Shown here one piece after another: positions 9,357 through 61,526 of a stretch of DNA of 64,000 bases. The notes beneath the pieces were generated by a model. The model made no database searches. It was not told the DNA's origin and was given only the letters and a program-made list of their open reading frames with translations. The stretch comes from Macrostomum lignano. Taxonomy: Eukaryota. Position 1 is the stretch's first letter, and the number at the start of each line of letters is the position of its first letter. The DNA lies in contig NIVC01001347.1 of NCBI GenBank assembly GCA_002269645.1, positions 1 through 64,000 of the forward strand. The letters run 5' to 3'. Both the position numbers and the translations under genes were made by a program.

Positions 9357-9770
9357 CAAGACACATTGGTCCCAGAGAACCCAGAGACATTGGCCTTAGA
9401 GACCCCAGACACATTGGCCCTAGAGACACCAGACACATTGGCCCTAGAGACACCAGACACATTGGCCCTAGAGACACCAGACACATTGGCCCTAGAGACA
9501 CCAGACACATTGGCCCTAGAGACCCTAGACACATTGGCCCTAGAGACACCAGACACATTGGCCCTAGAGACCCTAGACACATTGGCCCTAGAGACCCTAG
9601 ACACATTGGCCCTAGAGACCCTAGACACATTGGCCCTAGAGACCCTAGACACATTGGCCCTAGAGACCCTAGACACATTGGCCCTAGAGACCCTAGACAC
9701 ATTGGCCCTAGAGATCCCAGACACACAGAGCCCCAGAGCCCCAGAAACAGTGGCCCTAGAGCGCTAGACG
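9357..9770. repeat. 24-bp minisatellite (CAGACACATTGGCCCTAGAGAC[A/C]C), ~15 copies, intergenic
   Basis: Direct tandem copies; produces 8-aa periodic ORFs in several frames. Confidence 0.95.
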
Positions 9771-33536: not shown

Positions 33537-34250
33537 TCTATACCTATAAAAATGAAAACTCTGTGTGTCTGTGGACAATTTTGATCGCTATGGACTCCCA
33601 AACCGCTCAACCAAATGACACCAAACTTTACACCCACCCTAAACTTACTACGGAGAATGTCTTAGGCTACCTTTAAATTTCCTAGACTCAAGTCTTCCTA
33701 CCTAAAAGTACAAAAAACTGCTCAAAATGCGCGATTTTTTCACTAAATCCCCCATAGCGCCGCTCCACTTCTACCGATTCTCTTCAAATTTGACACAGAT
33801 AATCTTAAACTATTTTGACACAATCATGTAAAATTTCAAGTCTCAAAGTTAATCCTGAAAGCCGCTGTGCACTTTTAAAGTTAGGCTGTTTTTTTCAGCG
33901 AGGCAGCCACCCCAACCTCCACCCGCCTGCCTTTCTTTCCCGATCTGGGCAAAGGGTGTGAATAGGTTTTAAAATGCCTAACTTTCGGCTGCCATAGTTT
34001 TGCTCCACGTGAAGCGATTGACTTCACATTTGACACTATTCTTTATTGACTCATTATCTGCCTACATGTAAAGTCTCAACTCTGTATCTCAATCCGGACG
34101 GAAACTGTAAGCATGTGAATTTTGTCTGCTTTTTCTGTTGTTTGTGCCACTCACTCACTCATTCCCCCAGCCTAGACAAAGGGTCAGGCGATAGGGCTCA
34201 ATGTACATAGCGAATGTACAGTGTTTTGGAATAACTTTTTAATAGCCTTC
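33537..34250 (+). mobile_element. Non-autonomous Helitron/DINE-like element (5' end; 3' end not defined)
   Basis: A|TCTATACCTATAAAAATG start, a TGTGTGTCTGT microsatellite, then AAACCGCTCAACC...ACCAAACTT core-like motifs repeated internally. Same architecture as at 38267. Confidence 0.45.
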
Positions 34251-34719
34251 TCCGCACCCCGCGCGTGGAGAGGCTACGTTTAGCCATGACAGTTTAGCGA
34301 GAGATTCAAACCAGTGTCCTCTGTATAGACAAGTCTGCAGCAGTTTAACAGTGGATGGCAAATCAAGGCGATATGGGATGGTTTGTAAAAGCGAAAAATT
34401 TATAACTGATTAGTAGTGATTACAATGCAATCCTACTAAATTAGTTACACCATGAAAATTTTAACATTAAGATTCGCATAAAGTACTTTAAAATTTAAAT
34501 GGCTCCTAAGAAATACGTATTTCCTTGGTTGTTAGACTGCTGCAGACTGTGGTGGTGGAGCTGGGCTGGAAGGAGATACACAAATTCCTCTCAGGGCTGC
34601 TAATTGGCCAGAAATATGTGATTAAAGCATAACAACCATGAGAGTACTACGTCCCACAAACGCTTTCGAAGTGGGGATTGGCAGACTTTAACCTCAAATG
34701 CCAGATAAAGAATGCAGCT

Positions 34720-36030
34720 CATGGCTGATGAGATGAGAGTTAAAAGGAGAAGCAATAGACTACAAGAAGAGAGGAGAAGCGAGAGGAGGATAAGAGAAAA
34801 GATAGAAGACAAGAAGAGAGATTATGGGGTAAGGATAAGGAGTGAGCAGATAATATTGGAGTAAGAAGCGAGAGGAGAAGAGAGAGAAGAGAGAGGAAAG
34901 AGTAGAAGTGAGAAGAGGGAGAGAGAAGATGGGAGAGATGAGACAGGATCGATGACAGAGGAGAGTAGACAAGAGTGAGAAGAGAGTAGAGATGAGAGAT
35001 GAAGGAGGAGAGAGCAGAGTGCAGAAAGGCGAGAGAAGAGAATAGAGGGGAGAGAGTATAGTAGAGAGAAGAGGAGTAAGGAAAGAGAGGAATCAGAAGA
35101 GGGTAAAGAGAAGAGTACACTGAAAATTGGAGAGTACAGATGACAGAAAAGAGAGGGGATGAGAGCGAACACAATATCTGAGAGGAAAGAGGAGAGAGGA
35201 GTCAGATGAGGGGAAAGAGAAGAGTACAGAGGAGAGAGGTGAGAACATACGAGTATACGAGAGTAAAGATGACAGATGAGAGAGGGAAGATAAGACTGAG
35301 AGAGCAAAGACAAGAGATGGGAGAGTAGAGAAAAAGGATAGATAAGAAATAAGAGATGAGAGATGAAAGGTGAGACAAAGGGAGAGAGAGAGAGAGAGAG
35401 AAGTGAGTGAAGAAAGAGGCGGGGAGGGGAGAGAATCGAGAGGACAGGGGAAAGAGGGGAAAGGATGAGAGAAGGAGAGATAGAGGTAGAGAGCATGCAG
35501 AGAGAAATGAGAAGAGATAAGAGAGAAAAGATAAAAGAAGAGAAAGGAGAGATAGATAAGAGAGCAAAGACGAGAGAGGAGAGGCGAAGGAAGAGACGAT
35601 AGAAGAGAGGAGAGGAGAGGAGAGAGACGAGAGAGTACAGAGTACAGAAGAGGGAGGAGAGGAGAAAGGAGAGAGGAGAAGTGTTCGGAGAGGGTAGAGT
35701 AAAGAGTGAGAAGAGGGGAGAGGGTAGAGAGAATAGAGAGCAGAGAGAAGAGAGTAGAGAGCAGAGAGAAAATAGAGTAGAGAGGAGAGAGAAAAGAGAG
35801 TAGAGAGCAGAGGGAAGATAGAATAGAGAGCAGAGAGAAATAGGAAGAGATGAAACAGGAGAAAGGGAGAGATAAGAGAGCAGAGAGGAGAGGAGAGGAG
35901 AGAAATTATTAAGAGGGAGTAGACAAAAGAAGAGGGGATAGAAGAGAGAGAGAAGAGACCACAGACCAGAGAGAAGAGAGAAAACAGAAGAAAAGGTAAA
36001 GATAGAAGTTTCTAAGGATCCAACTTCCAA
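34720..36030 (+). repeat. ~1.3-kb GA-rich polypurine low-complexity tract
   Basis: The plus strand is almost entirely A/G (AGAG, GAGGA, GAAGA words) with no fixed period. Confidence 0.95.
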
Positions 36031-38266: not shown

Positions 38267-38789
38267 TCTATATATTAAAAATGGTTTGTTTGTTTGTACA
38301 AAATCAATTATCTCCCAAAAGGCTTGACCAATTTCTTCGAACTTGCACTGTTCAATCAGAATTTTTTTTGTGATGGTACATGCATCATGGCCAAGAAATT
38401 ACTCCATGTTAAAAGGATTAAATATTTAAAAAAACATGCTTTCTTGCAAAGGTCAAGCAGCTCTTTCAACTTGAAATGCATTGTAAGGATGCTAGAAAGA
38501 AAACTGACTAGTTAAATTCTGATTCTTAAATAGATTGCATCATACCAGGCTTTTTATTTATTCAGTCTGTGTACTGGCTAAATTTTGACACTGAATTGAA
38601 TTGCATCATAGTATTGAAAATGCAATGTGGAAGCATAGTACAATACTTGATTTATATTGCAAAACCACAATGCTAACTTTGTTAGAGACTGGTACTGACT
38701 TGCCTAAGAAATTGATTATGTCATAACTGCTTTGTGTGACTTACTCAATTGACTTGTGAGTGTTGAAATATAAATGCTACTGTCACCAA

Positions 38790-39120
38790 GGATTATTGCA
38801 CTTGATAAACCAAAGATTACTGCGCTTGATAAACCAAGGATTACTGCACTTGATAAACCAAGACTTACTGCACTTGATAAACCAATGATTACTGCACTTG
38901 ATAAACCAATGATTATTGCACTTGATAAGCCAAAGATTACTGTACTTGATAAACCAAGACTTACTGCACTTGATAAACCGATGATTATTGCACTTGATAA
39001 ACCAAGGATTACTGCACTTGATAAACCAAGACTTACTGCACTTGATAAACCAATGATTATTACGCTTGATAAACCAATGATTTATTGCACTTGATAAACC
39101 AAGGATTTCTGCACTTGATA
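38790..39120. repeat. 24-bp minisatellite (CACTTGATAAACCAAGGATTACTG), ~14 copies
   Basis: Direct tandem copies; 8-aa periodic ORF. Confidence 0.95.
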
Positions 39121-39129
39121 ATATCTAGG

Positions 39130-45111: not shown

Positions 45112-45979
45112 AGGCTAGTTTTTTTCAGAATATAGTTACCCAGGTCACAAACCAACTGTCCTTTTAGTATATGTCTAGCACCTAAAAACCATTAAAATGG
45201 CACAGCTCAGCTCGTTGCTTTTATGAATCTATTTTATCATTCTTAGCAGACTTTGTAATATTTATGTGTAACAAAAATGATAAAATATATTCATAAAACC
45301 AATGAGCCAAGCTATGTCATGCATTTTTATGATTCTTAGATATAGGGAATGTATATAAAATAAAACATTAGCATGAATCCTATTTCTAAATCAAAATCTT
45401 TATGAATACCAATAAAGCTATAAAAAGAAAACATATGAAACAATGTGTGCTGAAAAACTGAAAATTTCATGCCATAGTATTTTTTAAGAAATGTAGTTTT
45501 TCATCTTTCTACTTAAGTAGTCCTTGGAGCACATTAGTTGCTTGCTACTAGTCACTTAGTGCCAAGACCATGGCTTGTTGCTGGGATAGATTTGCCTTAA
45601 TGCTATAAATATAACCAATAGTGTCTTTGACATCAGTGCTAGAGCCTACAGCTTGTGGCCAATGGTATGCATAACTTTGATATTAGCAATATTTTGATGC
45701 CTCTGAAGTCTGAATGTTAGGATCCATTTTTAACATTAGCTTACTACTATGGAATCATAAAAACAAAACAGAATATTTACTAAAGTGTCTAAGGATTTAA
45801 AATTATTCTTGTGTATGAGTAACACAAAACAAAGTTATGATTTTTGCATTGGTATTGCTTGGAACTATTCAAATTTTGTTGAATTTCATGCTTCTGCTAA
45901 TGCTTGTAAAAATATGGTAAATGAGAGGCTTTATTATCAGTATTTTTTCTTATCTCATGCTGTAAAGCATCATAAATGG

Positions 45980-46372
45980 ATGGATTCTGATTCTGATGCT
46001 GAATGTACAGTAGTATCAAAAGATTGCCAAAAACGGTTAGATCAAGTTGGTAAACTTGGCTTCAAAGAGGGTGCAGCAAGCAAAAGTGAACTTGATCAGC
46101 AAGTTTGCTTTGACGAAGCCTTCAAAGTTTCGGAGCCACGCGCTGAAAGACTCGGTGCATTGAGGGCGCGCTTGTTGTGCAAACGCCAACTTGTCACTAA
46201 TACTGTGGCCTTTGATAGTGTCCTGAGTGATATCGAGCAATACTGCTTGCGTGAATTACCAACAAAGCTTCTTGTCAACGACACATTAAGTATTGATAAC
46301 CACATCGATCAGCTAGAAACTCTTGTGGACTTTTTGTTGTTATCCGCTCAGACTCCAAGCAGCAATGTTTAG
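45980..46372 (+). CDS. YAE1-like (Yae1_N domain) small protein, 130 aa, single exon
   Basis: LGFKEGAASKSELDQQVCFDEAF...RLGALRARL fits the Yae1/Lto1 pattern G(Y/F).EG...G.E...Q..FD.GF...G.L.G.L, preceded by an acidic MDSDSD start. Confidence 0.65.
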   Translation: MDSDSDAECTVVSKDCQKRLDQVGKLGFKEGAASKSELDQQVCFDEAFKVSEPRAERLGALRARLLCKRQLVTNTVAFDSVLSDIEQYCLRELPTKLLVNDTLSIDNHIDQLETLVDFLLLSAQTPSSNV

Positions 46373-48567
46373 TGACAACGAGGCGCAGGAGTTTACAGCT
46401 CAACATTGGAAACGGCTGGCGCATCTGGCTGTCACTTATAAACAGTCAGGTGATGACAATCCATTGCGCGCTTTTCTAACTAGGGCTTTTATAACAGATG
46501 GAAAAATTTACGACGGAAAATTTCATAAAGAAAAGCAGAATGAGGAGTGTCAAGTGGAGGTTGGCAAAAAATATGACGATTCGCTGAATCCAGATGAAAG
46601 TGATGCCCAACCTGTTGTAATGGCCGCAGTGCCTGCTGATGCCGTTTCTGACCGGCTGGCCGAATTGTGCATTTCAGCCGATTCTGGCACTGCCTGCGAC
46701 GGCGAAGAGGAGACTCGTACTACAGAAAAAGAAATTGGGGCGTCTACTAACTCGGAAATGAACAAGGAAGCCTGCGAAGTAATGAGTCCAGAAGATGAGG
46801 AGCGAATGATGGCTATGCTGGGTCTGCCAACTAATTTCGCTGTCCGTCAAAGGCGGCAACGCCGAGATGGCGGCGATTCAAGTCGAAAACCAGGAAAACG
46901 TCCAATGCAGCACCAAGATCGAGATGCCCCATTAATGGAACCAGAGAAAAATATTTTAGAGACTGCCGACGAGTCGCCAAAGCGACGCAAATCCATTCCC
47001 GAAGTTGTTTCTGAAGATTTCAAGGAAGACGCCAATGAGGAACAAGTTTACCACGGCCCGCACTGGCCAGACTATGAATGGATTGCTGGCGAGTTCGAAC
47101 GCTATTGGAACGCTAATCGCGATCGCTGCATCTGGCTAGCTTGGGTGCGCCGTTTCGGTGCTTACATGACCGAGGAGAGCTGGTCTGGTATGCCAGCTAG
47201 CCTGCGCGAAAATGAGGAGTTTCTGCAACTGCTGCGCGAACAACAAGGCTCGAATTCGTCATCTGCCGGGTTGCCTGTTCAAGACTGGGATTTAGAGTGG
47301 CAGAGAAACAGTGAAACAGCCTACTGGGCCGAGATTCTCCGGTTTGTCTCCCGCTACCGACCAGGATCTGGGGCCAAACAGTCGGCCCTGAGACTGGCTA
47401 AGCGGCTTGGATTTGTTTACAAAGCTCATCTTGATCAAGATCATGTGTCGGCTAGCAACTACCAGCTGCTTCCCGCTGGAGAGACTGCCGCTCATCTATC
47501 CTACAAAGACTATAAGGCGATTGAACGAGATGCCGAAACAGAGGTATTTTTGACCTTTCTTATTTCCCTGCATATTAAAATTATTGAAACTCATGTACTA
47601 TTTCTTGCTGCAGACTGTACAAGTTATAATGAGTGAGGTACAGTATTCAACCTTAGTTTTAATACTTTGTGGGAGTCAGAAGAATCACTATAGACAAATA
47701 GGATTAGATTTCTGTTAACCTCTTTATCACGCTTTGTTCCTGTGCAGTTCCATACTGGTCTCTTAAGATCGTAACTAAAGCCTTCTTCAACTAAAAGCCA
47801 CCTTTTTGAGATTAGAGAACGCCGTTCCAGTTTACCTGTTGTCTTGTTAAGTTCCGCTACCTTCCTTCGTGTGTTTTATTTTATAGGCTGCTGAGGCTAA
47901 AACCGCCCTGCAAGATCCAATACTGAACAAGTACTGGAATCAGCGCTACCGGTTCTTCGACAAATTCGACGATGGCATCCAGCTGGATAGAGAGGCCTGG
48001 TTTAGCGTCACGCCGCAGAGAATCGCCCGCCATCAGGCTGAGCGACTAAAATGCCCTGGCATCCTGATTGATGCATTTTGCGGCGCCGGCGGCAATGTTA
48101 TTCAATTTGCCCAGCTGAGCGGCCACGTTATCGCCATAGACATCGATCCCAGCCGCCTGGCCATGGCCGAGCACAATGCCGGCGTCTACGGTGTGCTTAA
48201 CAATATCAGCTTCCTGTGCGAAGATTTTTTCGACGCTGTGCCCCGTCTCGGCGCCATTGCCGATGCCATCTTTCTATCGCCACCTTGGGGCGGTCCCAGC
48301 TATCTAGACAAGGACGTATTCGATCTGGACGAGCCGGTTCTGTCCGGCGGTCGCTCCGTTGCCGACTGCGTTCGCTCCGCCCTGGCCCACTGCGCCAGCG
48401 TTGCTATCTACCTGCCCCGCAATGTGGACCTGGGCCAGCTGACCCGCCTGCTGGCCGGCTGTCGGGCTGGTATTGTTGAGGTTGAGCAAAATATGCTCAA
48501 TGGCCGGCTGAAGGCTATCACAGTCTACACCGGTGGCCTTGTGGACGCAGTGACTGCTGACTATTAA
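46365..48567 (+). CDS. TGS1: Trimethylguanosine synthase (PIMT-like long form), 619 aa; exons 46365-47543 and 47887-48567
   Basis: KYWNQRYRFFDKFDDGIQLDREAWFSVTPQRIA, IDAFCGAGGNVIQFA, IAIDID, IFLSPPWGGPSY and YLPRN are TGS1 methyltransferase motifs. The N-terminal MAMLGLPTNF and YW...IW..W motifs resemble PIMT. Phase-0 GT-AG intron. Confidence 0.93.
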
Positions 48568-48630: not shown

Positions 48631-49235
48631 ACTAGACATCTCACTTGCAATTAAATTTGTGAAAAGATAGAGCGTCTACTACTCTTTTTCAGTAGTTTGC
48701 CTATGAAGTTAGGAATAAACAGCAAGCATTCAACCCGATGTACACAAGTGAATGCAAGATGGAAAAAAACTCAGCCTGGGGGGAAGCCCAATCTAGCTCA
48801 GCCAATGAAAGAGCAGTAAGGAGAGAGGGCAAAGTCAGACGGTCGAAACTCAGCCTAGGGCAGGCCCAATCTGGCTTAGCCAATGAGAGAGCAGCAAGGA
48901 GAGAGGTCAAAGTCAGACACGAGTGGGCGAGAGGAAAGCCAAGCTGTAATGGAATGGGTGATGGAATGGGTTTATCGGCCTGTCTGGGGGCTGTGGAGCC
49001 ATCCCTTTTCTCTCTTGCTCGTTACGCACAAGCACTGGATTATGGCTTTTCATGTTTTCCTGCAATCTTCAGTCGTGAATCAATTATTTTTTTAATTATT
49101 TAAAGTCTGAGCAGGCTGGGGTTGGTATAACAAGGTAAAGAATAAACATGCTCAAAATTAAAGAGGCAAAAAACGCTAATTTTATACTGAAAAACCAGTA
49201 GACAAGCACATTTTTTGCGAGTGACATCTTCTAGC
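48631..49235 (+). mobile_element. Copy 2 of the CCAAT-array element (2 units)
   Basis: TA|ACTAGACATCTCACTTGCAA ... TTGCGAGTGACATCTTCTAGC|TA; internal CCCAATCTAGCTCAGCCAATGAAAGAGCAGTAAGGAGA. Confidence 0.8.
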
Positions 49236-50495: not shown

Positions 50496-50548
50496 GTATA
50501 AGCTACCTATCCACCTCCTTCAGCAATAAATCTGTCCCAATAGCAACA

Positions 50549-50947
50549 ATGGCCGGTGGCAAAGCGGGCAAAGACAGCGGCAAGGCCAAGCAGAAGGCCA
50601 TCTCTCGGTCAGCCAGGGCCGGCCTACAATTTCCAGTCGGCCGAATTCATCGCCATTTGAAGACCCGAACAACCAGCCACGGCCGGGTTGGCGCCACCGC
50701 CGCCGTGTACAGCGCCGCCATCTTGGAGTACCTCACCGCCGAAGTGCTGGAGCTGGCTGGCAACGCTAGCAAAGATCTGCGCGTTAAGCGCATCACGCCG
50801 CGCCATCTGCAGCTGGCTATTCGAGGCGACGAAGAGCTGGACACGCTGATTAAAGCCACCATCGCGGGTGGCGGCGTGATCCCGCACATTCACAAGAGTC
50901 TGGTGAATAAGAAGGGCGCAGCCACTGTGCCGCCAAAGGGCCATTAA
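50549..50947 (+). CDS. H2AZ: Histone variant H2A.Z (H2Av), 132 aa, no coding introns
   Basis: [93 protein letters not shown] is diagnostic of H2A.Z. Confidence 0.98.
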
Positions 50948-51449: not shown

Positions 51450-52345
51450 CTGATCCCTTCAAACTTATCAGTGACCCTACTGTCCCTGCAGATCCATCAG
51501 TGACCTCATTGTCCCCCTGCATATCCACCAGTGACCCCACTGTCCCAGCAGATCCATCAGTGACCCCACTGTCTTTGCAGGTCCATTAGTGACCCACTAT
51601 TAATGCAGATTCATCAGTGACCCCACTGTCCTTGCAGGTCCATCAGTGACCCACTGTCCCTGCAGATTCATCAGTGACCCCACTGTCCTTGCAGGTCCAT
51701 CAGTGACCCCACTATTAATGCAGATTCATCAGTGACCTACTGTCCCTGCAGACCCACCAGTGACCCCACTGTCCCCGCAGACCCACCAGTGACCCCACTG
51801 TCCCCGCAGATCCATCAGTGACCCACTGTCCCCGCAGATCCATCAGTGACCCACTGTCCCCGCAGATCCATCAGTGACCCCACTGTCCTTGCAGGTCCAT
51901 CAGTGACCCCACTATTAATGCAGATTCATCAGTGACCCCACTGTCCCCGCAGATCCATCAGTGACCCTACTGTCCCCGCAGATCCATCAGTGACCCACTG
52001 TCCCCGCAGATCCATCAGTGACCCCACTATTAATGCAGATTCATCAGTGACCTACTGTCCCTACATATCCATCAGTGACCCCACTGTCCCCGCAGATCCA
52101 TCAGTGACCCTACTGTCCCCGCAGATCCATCAGTGACCCACTGTCCCCGCAGATCCATCAGTGACCCACTGTCCCTGCAGATCCATCAGTGACCCACTGT
52201 CCCTACAGATCCATCAGTGACCCCACTGTCCCCGCAGATCCATCAGTGACCCACTGTCCCTACAAATCCATCAGTGACCTACTGTCCCCGCAGATCCATC
52301 AGTGACCCACTGTCCCTACATATCCATCAGTGACTCCACTGTCTC
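51450..52345. repeat. 28-29-bp minisatellite (GATCCATCAGTGACCC[C]ACTGTCCCCGCA), ~30 copies, between H2A.Z and MCM4
   Basis: Direct tandem copies. Confidence 0.95.
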
Positions 52346-52675
52346 TGCAGATCTCCACGACTCCTTTGTGAATCCATCACTGTCCTCACTACTCCACGTA
52401 AATCATCTGTGACCCCGGTACAACCCATCTAAAGCATCATTGACCCTTAAAACCGTGAGTTATTTTGCTTAGGTTGAATAATTAGACTAGTCCCTACGTA
52501 GCTGATCAAAACCACCTATATATTACTACTAATCGATATAAATAATTAATTTTGCATTACTTGAAGTAGTACGCTATTTAAATTCTTTTCACTTCAGTTC
52601 AGCAAAAAGTTGCTAAATAAAGCCCGGCGTTTCCGCAGCACCGAAGCCATCAAATAGGTAAACAAAGCGACAGCC

Positions 52676-55600
52676 ATGTCCGAAGCGGACCGTCAGCAGT
52701 ATCAGCGACCCGGCGGCGAGCCGAGTGGCATCCACGACTCCGAGGTTGACTACAGCTCCCCGCTGCGCTACGGAACCGGCGGCGCTGGCGGCCCGCCGTC
52801 CGAGCAGCAGCCGACTTCGGTCTCCGGGGCCGGCGTCTCGTCCAATCGGTCCACCCAAAGGCCCGGCCTGCGCGAGGATCAGGCCGAGCGGCGCACCATC
52901 GCCTTGGAGCCGAACGCCGAGGACGGCGGCGTTGTCATCTGGGGCACCGATGTGAATGTCAGCCGGATTGAGCGGCTGTTCAGAACTTTTATTACTACAT
53001 TCACTCCGCAGGTGAGCGCTTCAGGAGAGTTGTGCTGAAATCTATATCGCCTTCCGCATCCTGATTCTGTAAATCACCTTCCGCATCCTCATTCTGTGAA
53101 TTCCCTTCCGCATCCTCATTCTGTAAATCACCTTCCGCATCCTCATTCTGTAAATCACCTTCCGCATCTCATTCTGTAAATCGCCTTCCGCATCCTCATT
53201 CTGCAAATTCCCTTCCGCATCCTTCTGTAAATCACCTTCCGCATCCTCAAATCGCCTTCCGCATCCTCATTCTGTAATCGCCTTCCGCATCCTCATTCTG
53301 TAAATCGCCTTCCGCATCCTCATTCTGTGAATTCCCTTCCGCATCCTCATTCTGTAAATCACCTTCCGCATCCTCATTCTGTAAATCACCTTCCGCATCT
53401 CATTCTGTGAATTCCCTTCCGCATCCTCATTCTGTAAATCACCTTCCGCATCCTCATTCTGTAAATCACCTTCCGCATCCTCATTCTGTAAATCGCCTTC
53501 CGCATCCTCATTCTGTAAATCGCCTTCCGCATCCTCATTCTGTAAATCACCTTCCGCATCCTCATTCTGTAAATCACCTTCCGCATCCTCATTCTGCAAA
53601 TTCCCTTCCGCATCCTTCTGTAAATCACCTTCCGCATCCTCAAATCGCCTTCCGCATCCTCATTCTGTAAATCGCCTTCCGCATCCTCATTCTGTAAATC
53701 GCCTTTCGCATCCTCATTCTGCAAATTCCCTTCCGCATCCTTCTGTAAATCGCCTTCCGCATCCTCAAATCGCCTTCCGCATCCTCATTCTGTGAATTCC
53801 CTTCCGCATCCTCATTCTGTAAATCGCCTTTCGCATCCTCATTCTGTAAATCGCCTTCCGCATCCTCATTCTGTAAATCACCTTCCGCATCCTCAAATCG
53901 CCTTCCGCATCCTCATTCTGTAAATTGCCTTCCGCATCCTCATTGTGTAAATTGCCTTCCGCATCCTCATTTTGTAAATCGCCTTCCGCATCCTCATTCT
54001 GTAAATTGCCTTCCGCATCCTCATTTTGTAAATCGCCTTCCGCATCCTCATTCTGTAAATTGTCTTCGGCATCCTCATTCTGTAAATCGCCTTCAACATC
54101 CTTATGCTATCAATCGCTTTCCACATCCTCATTCTGTACCTGTCTTCCTTAATCTCTTTCCAACTTCGTCTGTAGCCTTCTGTACTACGGCGAATATTTT
54201 CTGCAGTTGCACATCTTGTTACTCTGTAGGAAGGCGCCCCGCCGCACTACATGGGCAAACTAGAAGAGATCTACGTGCTTGGCGATCGTCACCTTGACAT
54301 TGATTGCGTCCACCTGCGCCAGTACTCCGCTGAGCTGTACCGCCAACTGGTCACTTACCCGGGTGAGGTGATTCCGGCTCTGGACGTGGTCACTAATGCC
54401 ATGTTCGCCGAGCAATACAGAGACGCAGTGCTCGAGCAAGAGATTATGGTGCGACCGTTTAACTGCGATCGGGCCAGGTCTCTGCGCGCCTTGGATCCCG
54501 AAGATATTGACCAGCTGGTGACTGTGCGGGGCATGGTCACCCGGCTGTCTCCCATCATACCGGAGATGCGAGTAGGCCTGTTCACCTGCTCCCTGTGCGA
54601 CCAGCAGGCGCAGAGTGTGCTAGACAGGGGCCGTATTGTTGAACCGGTGCTTTGTCCCACCTGTCAGGTGTGTGATTTATGATAATTGTAATTGTATCGA
54701 ATTAGGCTTTACTGTAGACAATTTTTCGAACGATTTATAATTTGCCAGTCTCCGGCGGGTTATTTTAATTAAATATCGAAAGTCGATAATATAAAAGCTA
54801 CTTAAGACGTGAGTTATGGAATTTTCCGAATTTAGTTTATTAATTTATTAGATAGATTTATTCATTCAGAGAAAAAAGGCGCCCCAACACCCAGCTAGGC
54901 CGATAAACAGTTTGACTTGTGTCTGACTTTGCCCTCTCTCCTTACTGCTCTCTTATTGGCTGAGCCAGGTTCGGCCTGCCCCCTAGACGGAGTTTCGTCC
55001 GTCTCACATCTCTCCTTACTGCTCTCCCATTGGCTCAGCTAGATTGGGCATTTCCCCTATGCGGAGTTTTGTCCGGCTCACATCTCTCCTTACCGCTCTC
55101 TCATTGGCTGAGCCAGATTGGGCCTGCTCCCATAGGCTGGGTTTCGTCTGTCTGGCGTTCACTTTTGTACATCGAGTTAAATGCTGAGCAGATCTGAGGC
55201 CGAGGAAAGCAAGGGAAATTTCAGCTTCCACAATAAATTTTAAAGTCATTGCGTAGACGAACTACTGAAAAGAGTAGAAGCTACTTTTTCACAATTTTAG
55301 TTGTGAGTGACTTTAGGAGTTTTTCTAAAAAAGATAGAACGATTTTCCGGGATACTATTTACTTTTATATCTTATGTTTTTTTCCGAGATGAGACTTGCC
55401 TTTTTCGGGAGCTATTTTTGTAAAACCTCTACATAAAAGTGTGTGTATAAAGGCTTCAATGATGACAGCTTGTAGCAATTTAAGTCCAGCTGTCGAAGAG
55501 CTAAAATATGCAATGCCATCCGACTATTCAGGGTCGCAACAGTTTCGATCTGGTGCACAATCGGAGCAAATTCACCGACAAGCAGCGGGTTAAACTGCAA

Positions 55601-58600
55601 GAATCGCCGGATGAAATGCCAGCTGGACAGACGCCGCAGACTTTATTGGTATACGCCTACGGCGATCTGGTTGACACTGTGCTACCTGGAGACCGGGTCA
55701 CCATCACCGGGATCTATCGGGCCACGCCAATGCGAGCTAATCCCAGGTATGAATGTCCAGTTCTAGGCTTAGCATCGATACTAATTAAAGTGAGCTGTTT
55801 ATGCATTCTTTAAAGCCGTCGCATCGCCCACCCCCACCCTACGCAGGCAGACGTCCATTCTGTCCGTGTTCCAGACCCACATCGACGTGGTGCACTTCGA
55901 ACGCGAGAAGAGCGGCCCAGACGATATTGGCGACGGTAGCAACTGTCTGAGCCCGGCCCGGGTTGAACAGCTGCGCTCGCTCAATCAGAAGGCCGATCTG
56001 TACGAGCGACTCAGCGCGGCCATAGCGCCGTCAATCTACGAGCACGAGGATATTAAAAAGGGCTTATTGCTGCAACTATTTGGCGGGGCTGATAAGCACT
56101 TTAAAGATGCTGGCCACTTCCGATCAGAGATTAACATTCTGCTGTGCGGAGACCCGGGCACGTCCAAGTCTCAGCTGCTGCACTATATCTACCGGCTCAT
56201 GCCCAGGGGCCAGTACACGTCTGGCAAGGGCTCATCGGCTGTAGGATTGACAGCCTACGTTACTAAGGAGCCTGACACTGGCCAGGTGGCTCTGCAAACT
56301 GGTGCCCTGGTGCTGGCTGACAGGGGTAAGCGCTTAGTTGCTGGCGGCTGCGTGTGCGTAATGTTGCATGCCGACATGTCTGTCTGTCTATTTGCATGCC
56401 CATGTGTCTTAGTGTCTGCTTGTATGCATGTCCATGTGTCTTAGTCTGCTTGTATGCATGTCCATGTGTCTTAGTGTCTGCCTGTATGCATGTCCATGTG
56501 TCTTAGTGTCTGCTTGTATGCATGTCCATGTGTCTTAGTGTCTGCTTGTATGCTTGTCCATGTGTCTTAGTGTCTGCTTGTATGCATGTCCATGTGTCTT
56601 AGTGTCTGTATGCATGTCAATTGTCAATGTGTCTAGTGTCTGCTTGTATGCATGTCCATGTGTCTCAGTGTCTGTCTGTATGCATTTCCATGTGTCTTAG
56701 TGTCTGCTTGTATGCATGTCCATGTGTCTTAGTGTCTGTATGCATGTCAATTGTCAATGTGTCTAGTGTCTGCTTGTATGCATGTCCATGTGTCTTAGTG
56801 TCTGCTTGTATGCATGTCCATGTGTCTTAGTGTCTGTATGCCTGTATGCATGTAAATTGTCAATGTGTCTAGTGTCTGCTTCTATGCATGTTTATGTGTC
56901 TTAGTGTCTGCTTGTATGCATGTCCATGTGTCTCAGTGTCTGTCTGTATGCATGTCCATGTGTCTTAGTGTCTGCTTGTATACATGTCCATGTGTCTCAG
57001 TGTCTGTCTGTATGCATTTCCATGTGTCTTAGTGTCTGCTAGTATGCATGTCCATGTGTCTTTGGGTCTGTCTTCTTGTATGCATTTCTATGTGTCTTAG
57101 TGTCTGCTTTTATGCATGTTCATGTGTCTTAGTGTCTGCTTGTATGCATGTCCATGTGTCTTAGTGTCTGCTTGTATGCATGTCCATGTGAATAAATATG
57201 TGTCTGTCTCTATCTCTGTTTTTATGCCTGTAGTATTTCAGAATCACCGACCGGTCGTTTCTACTGAAAGCAGGCACACACGTGTGGGTGGCTACTCACA
57301 CGTGTTTGTGTTGCAAGTATAAAAACGAATGGATTGATTTCTAAAGTTGTCCAAATGTATTTGTATGCCGTTCATTTTCTACCAAGCCAGTCCTCATCCT
57401 TCAATTAATTAATCAACAGGCATCTGCTGCATCGACGAGTTCGACAAGATGACCGACCACACCCGATCGATTCTGCACGAGGTGATGGAACAGCAGACCC
57501 TGTCTCTGGCCAAGGCCGGCATTATTTGCCAGCTGAACGCGCGCACTTCAATCCTAGCCGCTGCCAATCCTGCCCACTCCAATTGGGACATGCGCAAGAG
57601 CATAGTTGAGAATGTTCAACTAGGCCACGCCCTGCTCAGCCGTTTCGATCTCATCTTTCTCATGCTGGATCCGCAGGACGAGATGTACGATGCCCGTCTG
57701 GCCAGACACCTGGTCAGCTGCTACTACCGCGGCCAGGACGCCATGGCCGATGAGTCGGCCGACGCGCAGCTTATGCGCGACTACATTGGCTACGCTAAGG
57801 CCAACTTCCAGCCGAAACTGTCCGAAGAAGCGCGCATCTATCTGGTGTCCGAGTACGTTGAGATGCGCCGCATTGCCGGCCGCGGCGCCGTGTCCGCCTA
57901 TCCGCGCCAGCTCGAATCGTTGATCCGTCTGGCCGAGGCGCACGCCAGGATGCGCTGGAGCAGCGAGGTCACCAAGACCGATTGTCAGGAGGCGCGTAGA
58001 CTGCAGCGGGAGGCCTTGAAACAGGCGGCCACTGATCCGGCTACAGGGCTCATTGATGTTAATATTCTCACTACGGGTGAGTGTTGCTTGTGTCTAGTGT
58101 AGACATTTAGGCTTTTGATCCCTTCTGTTGTCTGTTGATCTCGCATCGTGTCTGCATTTGTCTGTCTGTTGATATTGTATCATTTCTGTATTTGTCTGCT
58201 GTAAATCTCGAGTCTGTAAATTTCTGCTATCAATCTCGAGTCTGTAACTGTCTGCTGTCAATCTCGAGTCGGTAATGTCTGCTGTCAATATCGAGTCTGT
58301 AACTGTCTGCTGTCAATCCTGAGTCTGTAACTGTCTGCTGTCAATCTGGAGTCTGTAACTTCTGCTGTCAATCTCGAGTCGGTAATGTCTGCTGTCAATC
58401 TGGAGTCTGTAACTGTCTGCTGTCAATCTCGAGTCGGTAATGTCTGCTGTCAATATCGAGTCTGTAACTGTCTGCTGTCAATCTCGAGTCGGTAATGTCT
58501 GCTGTCAATATCGAGTCTGTAACTGTCTGCTGTCAATCCTGAGTCTGTTACTGTCTGCTGTCAATCCTGAGTCTGTTACTGTCTGCTGTCAATCTCGAGT

Positions 58601-59800
58601 CTGTAACTGTCTGCTGTCAATCTGGAGTCTGTAACTGTCTGCTGTCAATCCTGAGTCTGTTACTGTCTGCTGTCAATCTGGAGTCTGTAACTTCTGCTGT
58701 CAATCTCGAGTCTGTAACTGTCTGCTGTCAATCCTGAGTCTGTTACTGTCTGCTGTCAATCTGGAGTCTGTAACTGTCTGCTGTCAATCTCGAGTCGGTA
58801 ATGTCTGCTGTCAATATCGAGTCTGTTACTGTCTGCTGTCAATCTCGAGTCTGTAACTGTCTGCTGTCAATCCTGAGTCTGTTACTGTCTGCTGTCAATC
58901 TGGAGTCTGTAACTTCTGCTGTCAATCTCGAGTCGGTAATGTCTGCTGTCAATATCGAGTCTGTAACTGTCTGCTGTCAATCTGGAGTCTGTAACTTCTG
59001 CTGTCAATCTCGAGTCGGTAATGTCTGCTGTCAATCTGGAGTCTGTAACTGTCTGCTGTCAATCTCGAGTCGATAATGTCTGCTGTCAATATCGAGTCTG
59101 TAACTGTCTGCTGTCAATCCTGAGTCTGTTACTGTCTGCTGTCAATCTCGAGTCTGTAATGTCTGCTGTCAATATCGAGTCTGTAACTGTCTGCTGTCAA
59201 TCCTGAGTCTGTAACTGTCTGCTGTCAATCTGGAGTCTGTATCTTCTGCTGTCAATCTCGAGTCGGTAATGTCTGCTGTCAATCTGGAGTCTGTAACTGT
59301 CTGCTGTCAATCTCGAGTCGGTAATGTCTGCTGTCAATCTCGAGTCTGTAACTGTCTGCTGTCAATATCGAGTCTGTAACTGTCTGCTGTCAATATCGAG
59401 TCTGTTACTGTCTGCTGTCAATCTCGAGTCTGTAACTGTCTGCTGTCAATCTCGAGTCTGTAACTGTCTGCTGTCAACCTGTCTACACGGCGGCACTGGT
59501 CAAATTGACAGCAGATAGCCACCGGACAAGTCCGTACACGAACCCTCAATAAGAGTCATGATACCATTTTGTGCAGGAATGTCTGCCTCCCTGCGCAAAC
59601 GCCGCACAGAGGTGGCCCAGGCTGTGACCGCCTATCTGGAGGACAGCGGCGCCAAGGTGCTGACGATGCAGAAACTGCTGGAGGAGGTCCGCTCCCGCAC
59701 AGAGCGACTCATTAGCCGCGACCTGCTGGAGGACGCGCTCAACCAGCTGCGCGTTGAAGGCCGGATCGACTGGAGCGGCAACACGGTGCGGCGCAGATAG
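52676..59800 (+). CDS. MCM4: DNA replication licensing factor MCM4, 782 aa; exons 52676-53011, 54230-54667, 55532-55746, 55847-56325, 57420-58076, 59577-59800
   Basis: [84 protein letters not shown] (Walker A), CCIDEFDKM (Walker B), [10 protein letters not shown] (Arg finger), [15 protein letters not shown]. All five introns are GT-AG and in phase; total 2349 nt. Confidence 0.97.
53045..54130. repeat. 27-bp minisatellite (CCTTCCGCATCCTCATTCTGTAAATCA), ~40 copies, MCM4 intron 1
   Basis: Direct tandem copies with recurring deletion variants. Confidence 0.96.
54880..55317 (-). mobile_element. Copy 3 of the CCAAT-array element (3 units, one end truncated), MCM4 intron 2
   Basis: Reverse complement of the unit (CTCTCCTTACTGCTCTC..ATTGGCTGAGC) occurs three times, plus homology to the left flank of copies 1 and 2. 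Confidence 0.75.
56385..57190. repeat. 32-bp minisatellite (GTGTCTTAGTGTCTGCTTGTATGCATGTCCAT), ~25 copies, MCM4 intron 4
   Basis: Direct tandem copies. Confidence 0.95.
58190..59480. repeat. 26-28-bp minisatellite (CTGTCTGCTGTCAATCTCGAGTCTGTAA), ~45 copies, MCM4 intron 5
   Basis: Direct tandem copies. Confidence 0.95.
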
Positions 59801-60661
59801 GTAGGGAGGACGGCCTGATGTGAACGGGCGATCTTGGACAAGAATTATCCATTCTAAATTGTGCCATTTTTAAGCAAATTTATTTCTCAAATATTTTACT
59901 GACTTCGCTAGTATTGCTGCATTTTCAATTGAATTATTTTTGCAATGTCCTTCTTTTTCAGTTGGTCTTTTTAGGCAATAAGTTAAATTAATTAACTATT
60001 TTCTTTAACTCCCAATTTTACTGCATTTTGCTGGTTTTCAACCTTCCGCGATTCAACATTTTCAAGTGCGAGCTAGCACGAGTATTTAGTGCTTAATAAA
60101 CTTTATTAAAATACAAATCGCGACTATGATACGATTGGTGCTTCAAACGGTATTAAACCTACAATACAGACATCGTTAGCCTTGCTTTTTCATTGCACTG
60201 TCTTCCTTCTGTGCAATTGGCATTCATACTATATAGCTGCAGTTGAATGAGGAGCACCTGAACTCGACATTGTACGAGCTAATGAAGTACGTTCTTGAAG
60301 TGACTCCCTTTAAGCCTTGCTCAATACCGCCAGATATTCGGTTGGATCGAAGAGGACTTGCTTAAAAAGTGCCGCTTGTACTATTGTTGCAAATAATTTC
60401 TGCCGTCGAGAGGCCTCGTACTGTCATGTCAATTCATCGTCTTCAATTAGGAATTTAGATTCCACTGGAATTGAGGGATTTCTTATACAATGTATTTTTC
60501 TCCCTCGACGAAATGTTCTCGTTCGGGAAATGTCTGTGAAGGAAGCCAATTTGACCTTATTGACAATGGTAGTTTGCGGCGCGAGTGTTACGGTCATTAT
60601 CTACGAGTACTGACGTAACCTACGACGCAACGGCATTTATAAATGACACACATTGGCCATG

Positions 60662-61003
60662 ATGTCAGGTCATCAAGGGTGGCCATAATGTCAGGTCATC
60701 AAGGGTGGCCATAATGTCAGGTCATCAAGGGTGGCCATAACGTCAAGTCATCAAGGGTGGCCATAATGTCAGGTCATCAAGGGTGGCCATAATGTCAGGT
60801 CATCAAGGGTGGCCATAATGTCAGGTCATCAAGGGTGGCCATAATGTCAGGTCATCAAGGGTGGCCATAATGTCAGGTCATCAAGGGTGGCCATAACGTC
60901 AGGTCATCAAGGGTGGCCATAATGTCAGGTCATCAAGGGTGGCCATAATGTCAGGTCATCAAGGGTGGCCATAATGTCAGGTCATCAAGGGTGGCCATAA
61001 TGT
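60662..61003. repeat. 26-bp minisatellite (ATGTCAGGTCATCAAGGGTGGCCATA), ~13 near-identical copies
   Basis: Period 26 measured (60662 to 60688). Confidence 0.96.
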
Positions 61004-61526
61004 CTATGCCTATGCCTGCTTATGCCTAAAGCTTTGTGCAACTCAAATTCTCATTGATTTAAAGCCTATAGAAAGCCATGTCTAAGTGTCGTTTGAGTCA
61101 TCAATGCTTGCTCTTTTTAGATGCTGATTCATATTGCAATAAAAAATACGTAAATAGATTCCCATTCCCTTATCTGATTGATGGGGAAAAACTGTCGAAA
61201 ACAATTCGATGGGCAGGCGAAAGGTTAGAATTGAATTTTCCTCTAAATATTAACGAAAATTTCTATCTCAGTTGCCATGGTAACAGGGCGAAGGAGGTGT
61301 CTAATTAACACAGACTGCTGGAGCCCGGCCCTGTTTCGTTTTTTTCTCCAAGCACGCGAAAACCTAATCCCCTGGTGATAGCCATCTCTCCTTCATTGGC
61401 TGGAGTCTGGCTGCTCATCTGAGAATAAATCTTAGCTGCTCAGACTGCTCAGACCCTGGCTCGCTAGGAAAACATCCATCTTAACCTCCTATACGTTTGC
61501 GACAGCCATCCTAGCTCAGTTCGAAA

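What the first reader, a model, noticed from the sequence alone, without database searches (positions are those of the whole stretch)
45980..46400. YAE1-like ORF overlaps the TGS1 start by 8 nt, with a splice acceptor for TGS1 inside the YAE1 coding sequence
Seen: the YAE1-like stop (TAG 46370-72) and the TGS1 ATG (46365-67) overlap as ATGTTTAG. A pyrimidine tract plus CAG (TTTTTGTTGTTATCCGCTCAG, AG at 46350-51) lies 13 nt before the TGS1 ATG, inside YAE1 codons. Known: flatworms use spliced-leader (SL) trans-splicing, and TGS1 makes the trimethylguanosine cap carried by snRNAs and SL RNA. Inference: one precursor could give mutually exclusive products, since splicing at 46351 removes most of YAE1 and yields TGS1 mRNA, while the unspliced form encodes YAE1. 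That would be a compact two-gene switch and possibly a feedback loop between TMG capping and TGS1 expression. Alternatives: a bicistronic mRNA with leaky scanning or reinitiation, or a single fused ORF split by an assembly indel (both frames are open over 46317-46372).
Basis: partly seen in the sequence, partly recalled or inferred. Interest (0 to 1): 0.8.

Follow-up and report, generated by a model that had tools for sequence, protein, structure and literature searches.

The report
Overlapping Yae1-like and TGS1 genes
In the flatworm Macrostomum lignano, a small conserved gene for a distant Yae1-like protein ends 8 bases after the start of the cap-methylating enzyme gene TGS1, an overlap also seen in a related species, so the two proteins must share one RNA precursor, though how each is made from it is still open.

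Summary
A 130-codon ORF runs from ATG 45980 to TAG 46370-72. The TGS1 ATG is at 46365-67, so the two overlap as ATGTTTAG. A pyrimidine tract plus CAG ends at 46351, 13 nt before the TGS1 ATG.

The window is Macrostomum lignano. Three genomic copies carry the identical arrangement, and a spliced RNA contig from a second, diverged species (L002) has the same layout: an 11-nt overlap, the same frame relation, and CAG|AC again 13 nt before the ATG. This refutes an assembly indel.

The upstream ORF is a real gene (63% amino-acid identity, dN/dS 0.14). It fails Pfam Yae1_N and has no database homologue, but profile comparison places it in register with Yae1 (P about 1e-4).

The mechanism is unresolved. 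The conserved orphan acceptor, and the published M. lignano annotation, which flags a TGS1 gene as trans-spliced, favour spliced-leader trans-splicing inside the upstream ORF. Three features favour translation of TGS1 from a dicistronic mRNA, as in Drosophila moi-Tgs1:
- an ATG-poor upstream ORF;
- weak upstream AUG contexts;
- an RNA contig that spans both ORFs.

Nothing supports the proposed feedback loop. I rate this a new variant of known kinds and of moderate interest.

The parts
45976..45990 (+). AUG1 mini-ORF (ATG GAT GGA TTC TGA, 4 codons), out of frame and overlapping the start of the upstream ORF. T at -3.
   Evidence: Identical in all three M. lignano copies and in L002.
45980..46372 (+). 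Upstream ORF of 130 aa, a divergent Yae1-like protein. Its only Met is the initiator, and the AUG context is weak (T at -3, G at +4).
   Evidence: identical in 3 copies; 63% aa identity, dN/dS 0.14 against L002; hhalign to Yae1; no Pfam hit.
45996..46013 (+). AUG3 mini-ORF (5 codons plus TAG), out of frame, C at -3. It is the only internal ATG shared by all copies and by L002.
46006..46364 (+). ATG-free stretch of about 360 nt between the 5' AUG cluster and the TGS1 AUG.
   Evidence: About 7 ATGs are expected from dinucleotide shuffles; 2 are observed in the window copy, 1 in L001 and L003, and 1 in L002.
46331..46351 (+). Pyrimidine tract plus CAG: a candidate orphan 3' splice site (spliced-leader acceptor) inside codons 118-124 of the upstream ORF.
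   Evidence: CNCAGAC is the only conserved block in the diverged 22 nt before the TGS1 ATG. There is no GT[AG]AG donor upstream within the ORF.
46352..46364 (+). 13-nt would-be 5' UTR of a trans-spliced TGS1 mRNA. It has the same length in L002.
46365..46372 (+). 8-nt overlap ATGTTTAG (TGS1 start plus upstream ORF stop). L002 has the 11-nt ATGCCAAGTAA with the same frame relation.
46365..47543 (+). TGS1 coding exon 1 (aa 1-393). The AUG has G at -3.
47544..47886 (+). TGS1 intron (GT...AG, 343 nt), absent from the L002 contig.
47887..48567 (+). TGS1 coding exon 2 (aa 394-619 plus stop), carrying the Methyltransf_15 cap guanine-N2 methyltransferase domain.
50516..50522 (+). CCTTCAG, a consensus M. 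lignano spliced-leader acceptor (YTNCAG) 26 nt before the H2A.Z/V ATG (50549). H2A.Z/V is the next gene on the same strand and belongs to the same transcriptional-unit name cluster (Mlig033998).

Best explanation
A conserved two-gene unit on one primary transcript. The small Yae1-like gene and TGS1 are co-transcribed in an operon-like unit that continues to H2A.Z. TGS1 mRNA is made by spliced-leader (SL) trans-splicing at the orphan acceptor ending at 46351. That cut discards all but the last 7 codons of the upstream ORF and leaves a 13-nt 5' UTR. The Yae1-like protein can only be made from RNA that escapes this trans-splicing, because its stop codon lies 21 nt beyond the acceptor. That RNA is either the full dicistronic RNA or an RNA polyadenylated inside TGS1 exon 1. 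Each precursor molecule therefore yields one product or the other. Shown here: the overlap, its conservation, selection on both ORFs, the conserved acceptor motif, and an RNA contig that crosses the junction in a relative. Inferred, not shown: that the SL is actually joined at 46352.
For: 1. All three M. lignano copies are identical across the ORF and the overlap.
2. The orthologous RNA contig L002 keeps the ORF (dN/dS 0.14, dS about 1.8), the overlap, the frame relation and CAG|AC exactly 13 nt before the TGS1 ATG, in an otherwise diverged tail.
3. A site of this strength is the only one in the upstream ORF, and none occurs in 1.86 kb of TGS1 coding sequence.
4. No consensus donor lies upstream in the ORF, so it is an orphan acceptor. 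PMC8629364 states that this is sufficient for SL trans-splicing.
5. In M. lignano 30-39% of genes are trans-spliced and operons are common.
6. A TGS1 gene (Mlig019700.g1) is flagged TRANSSPLICED.
7. The NCBI TGS1 copies are named Mlig033998g2 and g6, and the trans-spliced H2A is Mlig033998.g8. This fits TGS1 being the second gene cut out of a multi-gene unit by the TBONE pipeline. No other gene is called within 10 kb upstream.
8. At copy L001 the upstream ORF is recorded as a gene of its own, although TGS1 there is intact.
9. The neighbouring H2A.Z has a consensus acceptor 26 nt before its ATG.
10. SL acceptors inside coding sequences are documented in flatworms.
Against: - No SL-containing read or transcript was available here, so use of 46351 is not demonstrated.
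- The site matches only the CAG of the YTNCAG motif (one search compared).
- The TRANSSPLICED flag belongs to a gene ID that I could not tie to this locus, and the SL site could lie upstream of the small ORF.
- The T-rich tract and the CAG are also codons (Leu/Phe-rich, Gln-Thr), so protein constraint may explain part of their conservation.
- The only RNA contig found runs straight through the acceptor.
- The ATG-poor upstream ORF and the weak upstream AUG contexts have no role in this model.
- After trans-splicing, the SL's terminal AUG would open a 7-codon ORF (MTPSSNV*) that overlaps the TGS1 AUG.
Confidence: 0.5

Rival explanations
1. A mature dicistronic mRNA translated by leaky scanning, with reinitiation after the tiny ORFs. 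Ribosomes that pass, or quickly finish, the three weak clustered 5' AUGs meet no further AUG for about 360 nt and start at the TGS1 AUG. This is the same logic as the Drosophila moi-Tgs1 dicistronic gene. It could also operate alongside trans-splicing.
For: - L002 is a cis-spliced RNA contig that carries both ORFs.
- Only 1-2 ATGs lie between the two starts, against about 7 expected (P 0.005 and 0.0002 by dinucleotide shuffle). All lie within 25 nt of the ORF start and open ORFs of 4, 5 or 16 codons.
- The upstream protein has no internal Met in either species.
- AUG1, AUG2 and AUG3 all have a pyrimidine at -3, while the TGS1 AUG has G or A at -3.
- The recorded upstream gene model is 5'-partial and starts only 6 nt before the ATG, which suggests a very short leader.
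- Drosophila Tgs1 is the second cistron of a single mRNA.
Against: - With the protein sequence held fixed, the ATG deficit is weak (P 0.45 and 0.09).
- ATG-free runs of 360 nt or more cover about 9% of the window, and the H2A.Z coding sequence is also ATG-free.
- A de Bruijn contig can merge an upstream-gene mRNA and a trans-spliced TGS1 mRNA if they overlap, so L002 does not prove a single molecule.
- This model does not explain the conserved acceptor or the separate gene models.
Confidence: 0.3
2. Termination-reinitiation: ribosomes that finish the 130-codon ORF at TAG 46370-72 back up 5 nt and restart at AUG 46365. This is the mechanism used for calicivirus-type overlapping stop and start codons.
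For: The stop and start overlap by 8 nt in M. lignano and 11 nt in L002, with the same frame relation in both species.
Against: Reinitiation after a long ORF normally needs a TURBS-like element. No UGGGA motif lies in the 170 nt upstream in either species, and the local folds are not more stable than shuffled sequence (z -0.6 and -1.0). The overlap length itself is not conserved.
Confidence: 0.07
3. The acceptor at 46351 is used in cis. A leader exon upstream (for example the GTAAAG donor at 45962) is spliced to 46352, removing the whole small ORF as an intron to give a TGS1-only mRNA without the SL.
For: GTAAAG lies at 45962, just before the ORF. Sharing of acceptors between cis- and trans-splicing is reported in flatworms.
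Against: The donor lacks the +5 G of the M. lignano GT[G/A]AG consensus. The sequence around it varies among the three copies and is not conserved in L002. No such junction appears in L002.
Confidence: 0.05
4. An artefact: a single fused ORF split by an assembly indel, or a chance ORF that is not translated.
For: Both frames are open over 46317-46372.
Against: Three independent copies are identical. The orthologue keeps two frames with a different overlap length. dN/dS is 0.14, with differences of 31, 27 and 66 at codon positions 1, 2 and 3. The TGS1-frame sequence upstream of the ATG is not conserved as protein, while the TGS1 N-terminus aligns from Met1.
Confidence: 0.01

Closest known systems
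Drosophila melanogaster moi-Tgs1 dicistronic gene CG31241 (PMC7289441, PMC7605716; Komonyi 2005 and 2009 and Raffa 2009 as cited there)
   Same: TGS1 is the downstream cistron. It is immediately preceded on the same transcript by a small ORF (under 200 aa) for an independent, functional protein.
   Different: Moi is a fast-evolving telomere-capping protein with no identified domain, and no similarity to the flatworm ORF was detected. Drosophila has no SL trans-splicing. I could not check whether the fly ORFs overlap, and shared ancestry is untested.
Spliced-leader-resolved operons of M. lignano and other flatworms (PMC8629364, PMC5730564, PMC12582326)
   Same: Same-strand genes in one transcriptional unit, an acceptor a few nt to tens of nt before the downstream ATG, and a neighbouring trans-spliced gene (H2A.Z).
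   Different: Typical intercistronic distance is about 100 nt, with the upstream poly(A) site before the acceptor. Here the distance is negative (-8 nt) and the acceptor lies inside the upstream coding sequence, so resolving the operon destroys the upstream message.
C. elegans SL1-type operons (Williams, Xu and Blumenthal 1999; cited from my own knowledge, not read here)
   Same: No intercistronic spacer. Making the downstream mRNA and making the upstream mRNA from one precursor are mutually exclusive.
   Different: In the nematode the trans-splice site abuts the upstream poly(A) site, downstream of the stop codon. Here it lies upstream of the stop codon, and the coding sequences overlap.
Internal SL acceptor sites within coding sequences of flatworm genes (Boroni 2018, cited in PMC12582326)
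   Same: An SL acceptor placed inside an ORF.
   Different: Those sites truncate one gene's own product. Here the site would release a different, overlapping gene.
Yae1 (deca-GX3 adaptor that, with Lto1, delivers Fe-S clusters to ABCE1/Rli1; function cited from my own knowledge)
   Same: Similar size (130 aa, against 141 in yeast). An N-terminal acidic SDSD motif lies about 20 residues before a 39-residue segment that aligns without gaps to Yae1_N. Positions at period 4 are mostly small residues.
   Different: Only 3 of about 10 motif glycines are kept (G27, G31, G59); the others are A, S, C, K or D. It falls below the Pfam threshold, and its function is untested.

Membership tests
Yae1 / Pfam Yae1_N (PF09811) | Match to the Yae1_N HMM at or above the gathering score (27.5 bits) | tested here: not met
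   No hit even at E<=10, for either the M. lignano ORF or the L002 orthologue.
Yae1 / Pfam Yae1_N (PF09811) | Deca-GX3 motif (Gly every fourth residue over about 39 aa) | tested here: inconclusive
   Residues 27-63 at period 4 read G, G, K, D, C, A, S, A, G, A in M. lignano and G, G, K, D, L, A, S, A, G, A in L002. Three glycines are kept and most other positions are small residues.
Yae1 / Pfam Yae1_N (PF09811) | Profile-level similarity in register with bona fide Yae1 proteins and specific to them | tested here: met
   hhalign of A1 against two Yae1 sequences gives P 1.2e-4 and score 33, against 12.3 +/- 2.4 (maximum 23) in 300 column shuffles. Each sequence alone aligns in register (P 1.2e-4 and 5.5e-3). 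The Lto1-type control shows nothing (P 0.63).
Yae1 / Pfam Yae1_N (PF09811) | Binds Lto1 and recruits ABCE1/Rli1 | not testable with these tools
   Needs biochemistry.
SL trans-spliced operon (flatworm type) | Same-strand genes on one primary transcript | tested here: inconclusive
   The L002 RNA contig spans both ORFs. TGS1 and H2A share the transcriptional-unit name Mlig033998. There is no direct M. lignano read evidence.
SL trans-spliced operon (flatworm type) | SL joined at an acceptor just upstream of the downstream ATG | not testable with these tools
   The motif is present and conserved, and a TGS1 gene is flagged TRANSSPLICED, but no SL-bearing reads or contigs could be retrieved.
SL trans-spliced operon (flatworm type) | Positive intercistronic spacer, with the upstream stop and poly(A) site before the acceptor | tested here: not met
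   The upstream stop (46370-72) lies 21 nt after the acceptor (46351). No AATAAA or ATTAAA occurs before the intron at 47574.
Dicistronic mRNA translated by leaky scanning (Drosophila moi-Tgs1 type) | One mature mRNA containing both complete ORFs | tested here: inconclusive
   L002 is intron-free and contains both ORFs, but an assembled contig is not a single molecule, and it comes from another species.
Dicistronic mRNA translated by leaky scanning (Drosophila moi-Tgs1 type) | Weak upstream AUG context and an AUG-poor interval before the downstream AUG | tested here: met
   Pyrimidine at -3 for AUG1, AUG2 and AUG3; purine at -3 for the TGS1 AUG. There are 1-2 ATGs against about 7 expected. Significance is moderate only.
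Termination-reinitiation (TURBS type) | 18S-complementary UGGGA motif upstream of the stop-start overlap | tested here: not met
   No TGGGA in the 170 nt upstream in either species.

The most novel reading that the evidence does not exclude
The small-ORF-plus-TGS1 dicistron may be ancient rather than a flatworm oddity. On this reading the Macrostomum Yae1-like/TGS1 unit and the Drosophila moi/Tgs1 unit descend from one ancestral protostome arrangement, and the fast-evolving, domain-less telomere protein Moi is a runaway Yae1 derivative. Nothing here excludes this. Moi has no known domain or origin, no paper in the library links Yae1 with Tgs1, and I had no Moi sequence to compare.
Probability: 0.07. 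Interest if true: 0.8.

Novelty: new variant of a known kind. Interest (0 to 1): 0.5.

Why it matters
If the spliced leader is joined at 46352, this is an operon with a negative intercistronic distance. Resolving it necessarily destroys the upstream message, so the ratio of two unrelated proteins would be set by the efficiency of a single splice site. One is a Yae1-like Fe-S/ABCE1 adaptor. The other is the enzyme that makes the TMG cap of snRNAs and of the SL RNA itself.

If TGS1 is instead read from the dicistronic RNA, flatworms and flies would both express TGS1 as a second cistron. That raises the question of whether the coupling is ancestral or convergent, and why TGS1 in particular.

Either way, M. 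lignano has stable transgenesis, so the locus is directly testable. It is also a practical warning for annotation: the published record carries only one of the two genes at each of the two copies examined.

Tried and rejected
- **Pfam scan of the small ORF and its orthologue:** nothing at E<=1 or E<=10.
- **Word-indexed homologue searches, single sequence and two-sequence profile:** only the ORF itself.
- **Exhaustive phmmer against 1.84 billion representatives:** only the ORF itself plus a spurious repetitive 1442-aa protein.
- **PDB sequence search:** one insignificant bacterioferritin hit.
- **AlphaFold2 on the single sequence:** five helices, mean pLDDT 62. The Foldseek search against PDB gave no match below E about 2.
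- **Exact-protein look-up of the 130-aa product in RNA assemblies:** not on record. No M. lignano RNA-derived contig could be retrieved, so the SL junction could not be checked.
- **Supplements:** those of the 2016 eLife transcriptome paper hold no TGS1 or YAE1 entry. No paper mentions run SRR30276804, so the species of L002 is unknown.
- **Internal poly(A) signal for a short upstream-gene mRNA:** L002 has AATAAA 152 nt after the stop, but M. lignano has only CATAAA at the aligned place. Not convincing.
- **RNA structure around the overlap:** a similar long-range stem forms in both species, but it is no more stable than shuffles.
- **Rfam:** no known RNA family anywhere in the window.
- **Rejected ideas:** fused ORF or assembly indel, and Lto1 rather than Yae1 identity.
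Full report
**Observation**

- An ORF starts at ATG 45980 and ends at TAG 46370-72 (130 aa).
- The TGS1 ATG is at 46365-67, and the two overlap as ATGTTTAG.
- TTTTTGTTGTTATCCGCTCAG occupies 46331-46351, with its AG 13 nt before the TGS1 ATG.
- The nearest stop in the TGS1 frame is TAG 46314-16, so both frames are open over 46317-46372.
- TGS1 has two coding exons (46365-47543 and 47887-48567) separated by a GT...AG intron of 343 nt. The second exon carries the Methyltransf_15 domain.

**Origin of the window and the copies**

The locus belongs to Macrostomum lignano, assembly GCA_002269645.1. The window is one of at least three near-identical genomic copies. Copy L001 (NIVC01002124.1) is 98.4% identical across the locus and copy L003 (NIVC01000487.1) is 99.5% identical.

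All three copies encode the same 130-aa protein and have the same ATGTTTAG overlap. The only difference inside the ORF is a silent GAA/GAG change. An assembly indel is therefore excluded.

**A second species**

The only other relative of the TGS1 N-terminal region in the protein collection is P0003 (51% identity). It comes from a 2,414-nt Logan contig of run SRR30276804, here called L002. I could not identify the species.

L002 lacks the TGS1 intron and ends in an Illumina adapter, so it most likely derives from spliced RNA. It carries both ORFs:
- an orthologous 131-aa ORF (ATG 21 to TAA 414-416);
- TGS1 from ATG 406.

The two overlap by 11 nt (ATGCCAAGTAA), with the same frame relation as in M. 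lignano.

**Is the upstream ORF a gene?**

Yes. The two orthologues are 63% identical, which is more conserved than the TGS1 N-terminus. dN/dS is 0.14 and dS is about 1.8. Differences fall 31, 27 and 66 at codon positions 1, 2 and 3. The public record also holds it as a called gene at copy L001, with a 5'-partial product that starts 6 nt before the ATG.

**Is it Yae1?**

Direct tests fail.
- There is no Pfam Yae1_N hit even at E<=10.
- There is no homologue in two indexed searches or in an exhaustive phmmer search of 1.84 billion representatives.
- Nothing was found in the PDB by sequence or by fold.

A targeted profile comparison is positive. hhalign of the two-species alignment against two Yae1 sequences gives P 1.2e-4. 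The score is 33, against 12.3 +/- 2.4 (maximum 23) for 300 column shuffles.

Each Yae1 sequence alone aligns in the same register, with G27 of the ORF on the first glycine of the motif. The yeast-type sequence also matches the N-terminal SDSD acidic patch. An Lto1-type sequence that also carries Yae1_N shows nothing (P 0.63), so the signal is not generic GX3 composition.

Only three motif glycines survive, and most other period-4 positions are A, S or C. I read the protein as a probable, strongly diverged Yae1 relative. It is not a demonstrated family member.

**Evidence for trans-splicing at 46351**

Background from the literature:
- M. lignano joins a single 35-nt SL (…TTATTGCATG) to 30-39% of its genes.
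- It has many operons, and the top acceptor motif is YTNCAG.
- An acceptor with no upstream donor is regarded as sufficient for trans-splicing (PMC8629364 and PMC5730564).

What the locus shows:
- The site at 46351 has 15 of 20 pyrimidines before CAG. Sites that strong occur 0.4-0.7 per kb in the window, never in the 1.86 kb of TGS1 coding sequence, and once in the upstream ORF.
- No GT[AG]AG donor precedes it in the ORF.
- Between the two species, the 22 nt before the TGS1 ATG are largely diverged, except for CNCAGAC at the same 13-nt distance. The T-rich tract is also kept.

What the published annotation shows:
- A published table flags an M. lignano TGS1 gene (Mlig019700.g1) as TRANSSPLICED.
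- The NCBI TGS1 copies are named Mlig033998g2 and g6, and the trans-spliced H2A.V/Z is Mlig033998.g8.
- Gene names of this kind come from a pipeline that cuts transcriptional units at SL and poly(A) evidence. The numbering fits TGS1 as the second gene of a four-gene unit whose first gene is the small ORF. No other gene is called within 10 kb upstream. This last step is my inference.
- H2A.Z, 2 kb downstream on the same strand, has a textbook CCTTCAG acceptor 26 nt before its ATG.

The upstream stop codon lies beyond the acceptor. The Yae1-like protein therefore needs RNA that was not trans-spliced there, so the two products of any one precursor molecule would be mutually exclusive.

**Evidence for translation from a dicistronic RNA**

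- L002 runs uninterrupted from the small ORF into spliced TGS1.
- Between the two start codons there are only 2 ATGs in the window copy, 1 in L001 and L003, and 1 in L002. About 7 are expected (P 0.005 and 0.0002 by dinucleotide shuffle). TGS1 itself has 7-8 ATGs per equivalent length.
- The surviving ATGs sit within 25 nt of the ORF start and open ORFs of 4, 5 or 16 codons.
- The three clustered AUGs conserved in all copies and in L002 (45976, 45980, 45996) have a pyrimidine at -3. The TGS1 AUG has G in M. lignano and A in L002.
- In Drosophila, Tgs1 is the second cistron of the moi-Tgs1 mRNA (PMC7289441 and PMC7605716).

Caveats:
- If the protein sequence is held fixed, the ATG deficit is not significant in M. 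lignano (P 0.45) and only marginal in L002 (P 0.09).
- ATG-free runs this long cover about 9% of the window and include the H2A.Z coding sequence.
- A de Bruijn contig can fuse two overlapping mRNAs, so L002 does not prove a single molecule.

**Weighing the models**

The conserved acceptor and the ATG-poor interval are each only moderately unlikely by chance. Each is unexplained by the other model, and the two mechanisms are compatible with each other.

| Model | Confidence |
|---|---|
| SL trans-splicing at 46351, with the upstream protein made from unspliced RNA | 0.5 |
| Dicistronic translation by leaky scanning as the main route to TGS1 | 0.3 |
| Termination-reinitiation | 0.07 |
| Cis-splicing from an upstream leader exon | 0.05 |
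| Artefact (indel or chance ORF) | 0.01 |

The biology of the organism and the published gene models tip the balance toward trans-splicing. Termination-reinitiation has no UGGGA motif and no unusually stable local structure. The cis-splicing donor is weak and not conserved.

After trans-splicing, the SL's own AUG would be in the frame of the upstream ORF. It would open a 7-codon ORF (MTPSSNV*; MTKCENAK* in L002) that overlaps the TGS1 AUG. Its context would be weak.

**The feedback idea**

No evidence supports a loop between TMG capping and TGS1 expression. Being trans-spliced is ordinary in this animal. A fall in SL supply would lower TGS1 rather than restore it.

**Comparison with known systems and novelty**

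Operons, SL acceptors inside coding sequences, mutually exclusive processing in nematode SL1-type operons (my own knowledge), and a dicistronic Tgs1 gene in flies are all known.

What I did not find described is an operon with overlapping coding sequences, where the acceptor for the downstream gene lies inside the upstream ORF. I also found no link between Yae1 and Tgs1 in the library.

I classify the locus as a new variant of known kinds and of moderate interest. The most novel reading not excluded is common ancestry with the fly moi-Tgs1 unit. Moi has no known domain or origin.

Noticed in passing
L001 9977-9986; window 45950-45961; L003 about 9586-9597: Just upstream of the small ORF, the three otherwise 98-99% identical copies differ within one hexamer. 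The window has CTCATG, L003 has CTTCAG (a consensus YTNCAG acceptor), and L001 has TGCATG. This makes L001 read TTATTGCATG, which is identical to the last 10 nt of the M. lignano spliced leader. It is joined exactly where the L003 acceptor would join it (before CTGTAAAGCATCATAAATGG). It could be chance, since the 10-mer also occurs elsewhere in the loci, or it could be a footprint of conversion by a trans-spliced cDNA.
   Followed up: partly
window 46318-46326 with about 46397-46405; L002 359-367 with 438-446: In both species a 9-11 bp long-range stem (AAACUCUUG pairing with CAGGAGUUU in M. lignano and CAAGAGUUU in L002) encloses the acceptor, the TGS1 AUG and the upstream stop in one loop, with one G-U to A-U change between species. 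Both arms are conserved coding sequence, and overall folding is no better than shuffled sequence (z -0.6 and -1.0).
   Followed up: partly
window 45974-46003: The 6 nt before the small ORF and its first 8 codons are almost invariant at the nucleotide level between the two species: one synonymous difference, where about five would be expected at the observed dS. This covers the two overlapping mini-ORFs and their stops. It may reflect a translation-start or transcription-start element.
   Followed up: partly
L001 (NIVC01002124.1) and L003 (NIVC01000487.1): The public gene calls hold only one of the two overlapping genes at each of these copies. At L001 the small ORF is recorded but not the intact TGS1. 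At L003 TGS1 is recorded but not the small ORF.
   Followed up: partly
window 38785-39121, 51467-52353, 53046-54138, 56393-57190, 58185-59477, 60654-61004: Six minisatellite arrays with periods of 24-32 nt and 13-47 copies lie in the non-coding stretches around and inside the downstream H2A.Z and MCM genes. They account for the long ATG-free runs there.
   Followed up: no
window 34001-36000: A strong strand asymmetry (GC skew +0.53, AT skew +0.44) marks a purine-rich stretch of unknown nature.
   Followed up: no
window 48738-49103: A 121-aa ORF just after the TGS1 stop contains an internally repeated segment (…[23 protein letters not shown]… and …SLGQAQSGLANERAARREVKVR…). It is probably a repeat-derived, non-coding part of the spacer between TGS1 and H2A.Z.
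   Followed up: no
L002 2393-2414: The RNA contig of the related species ends in Illumina adapter sequence (AGATCGGAAGAGCGTCGTGTAG) directly after …GAGTGAAA. The 3' end is therefore a fixed fragment end, about 100 nt past the TGS1 stop, and the last 22 nt are not biological.
   Followed up: no
window 50549-50947: The H2A.Z/V-like coding sequence has no internal ATG in any frame (a 436-nt gap). This shows that ATG-free coding stretches of this size occur in ordinary genes here.
   Followed up: yes
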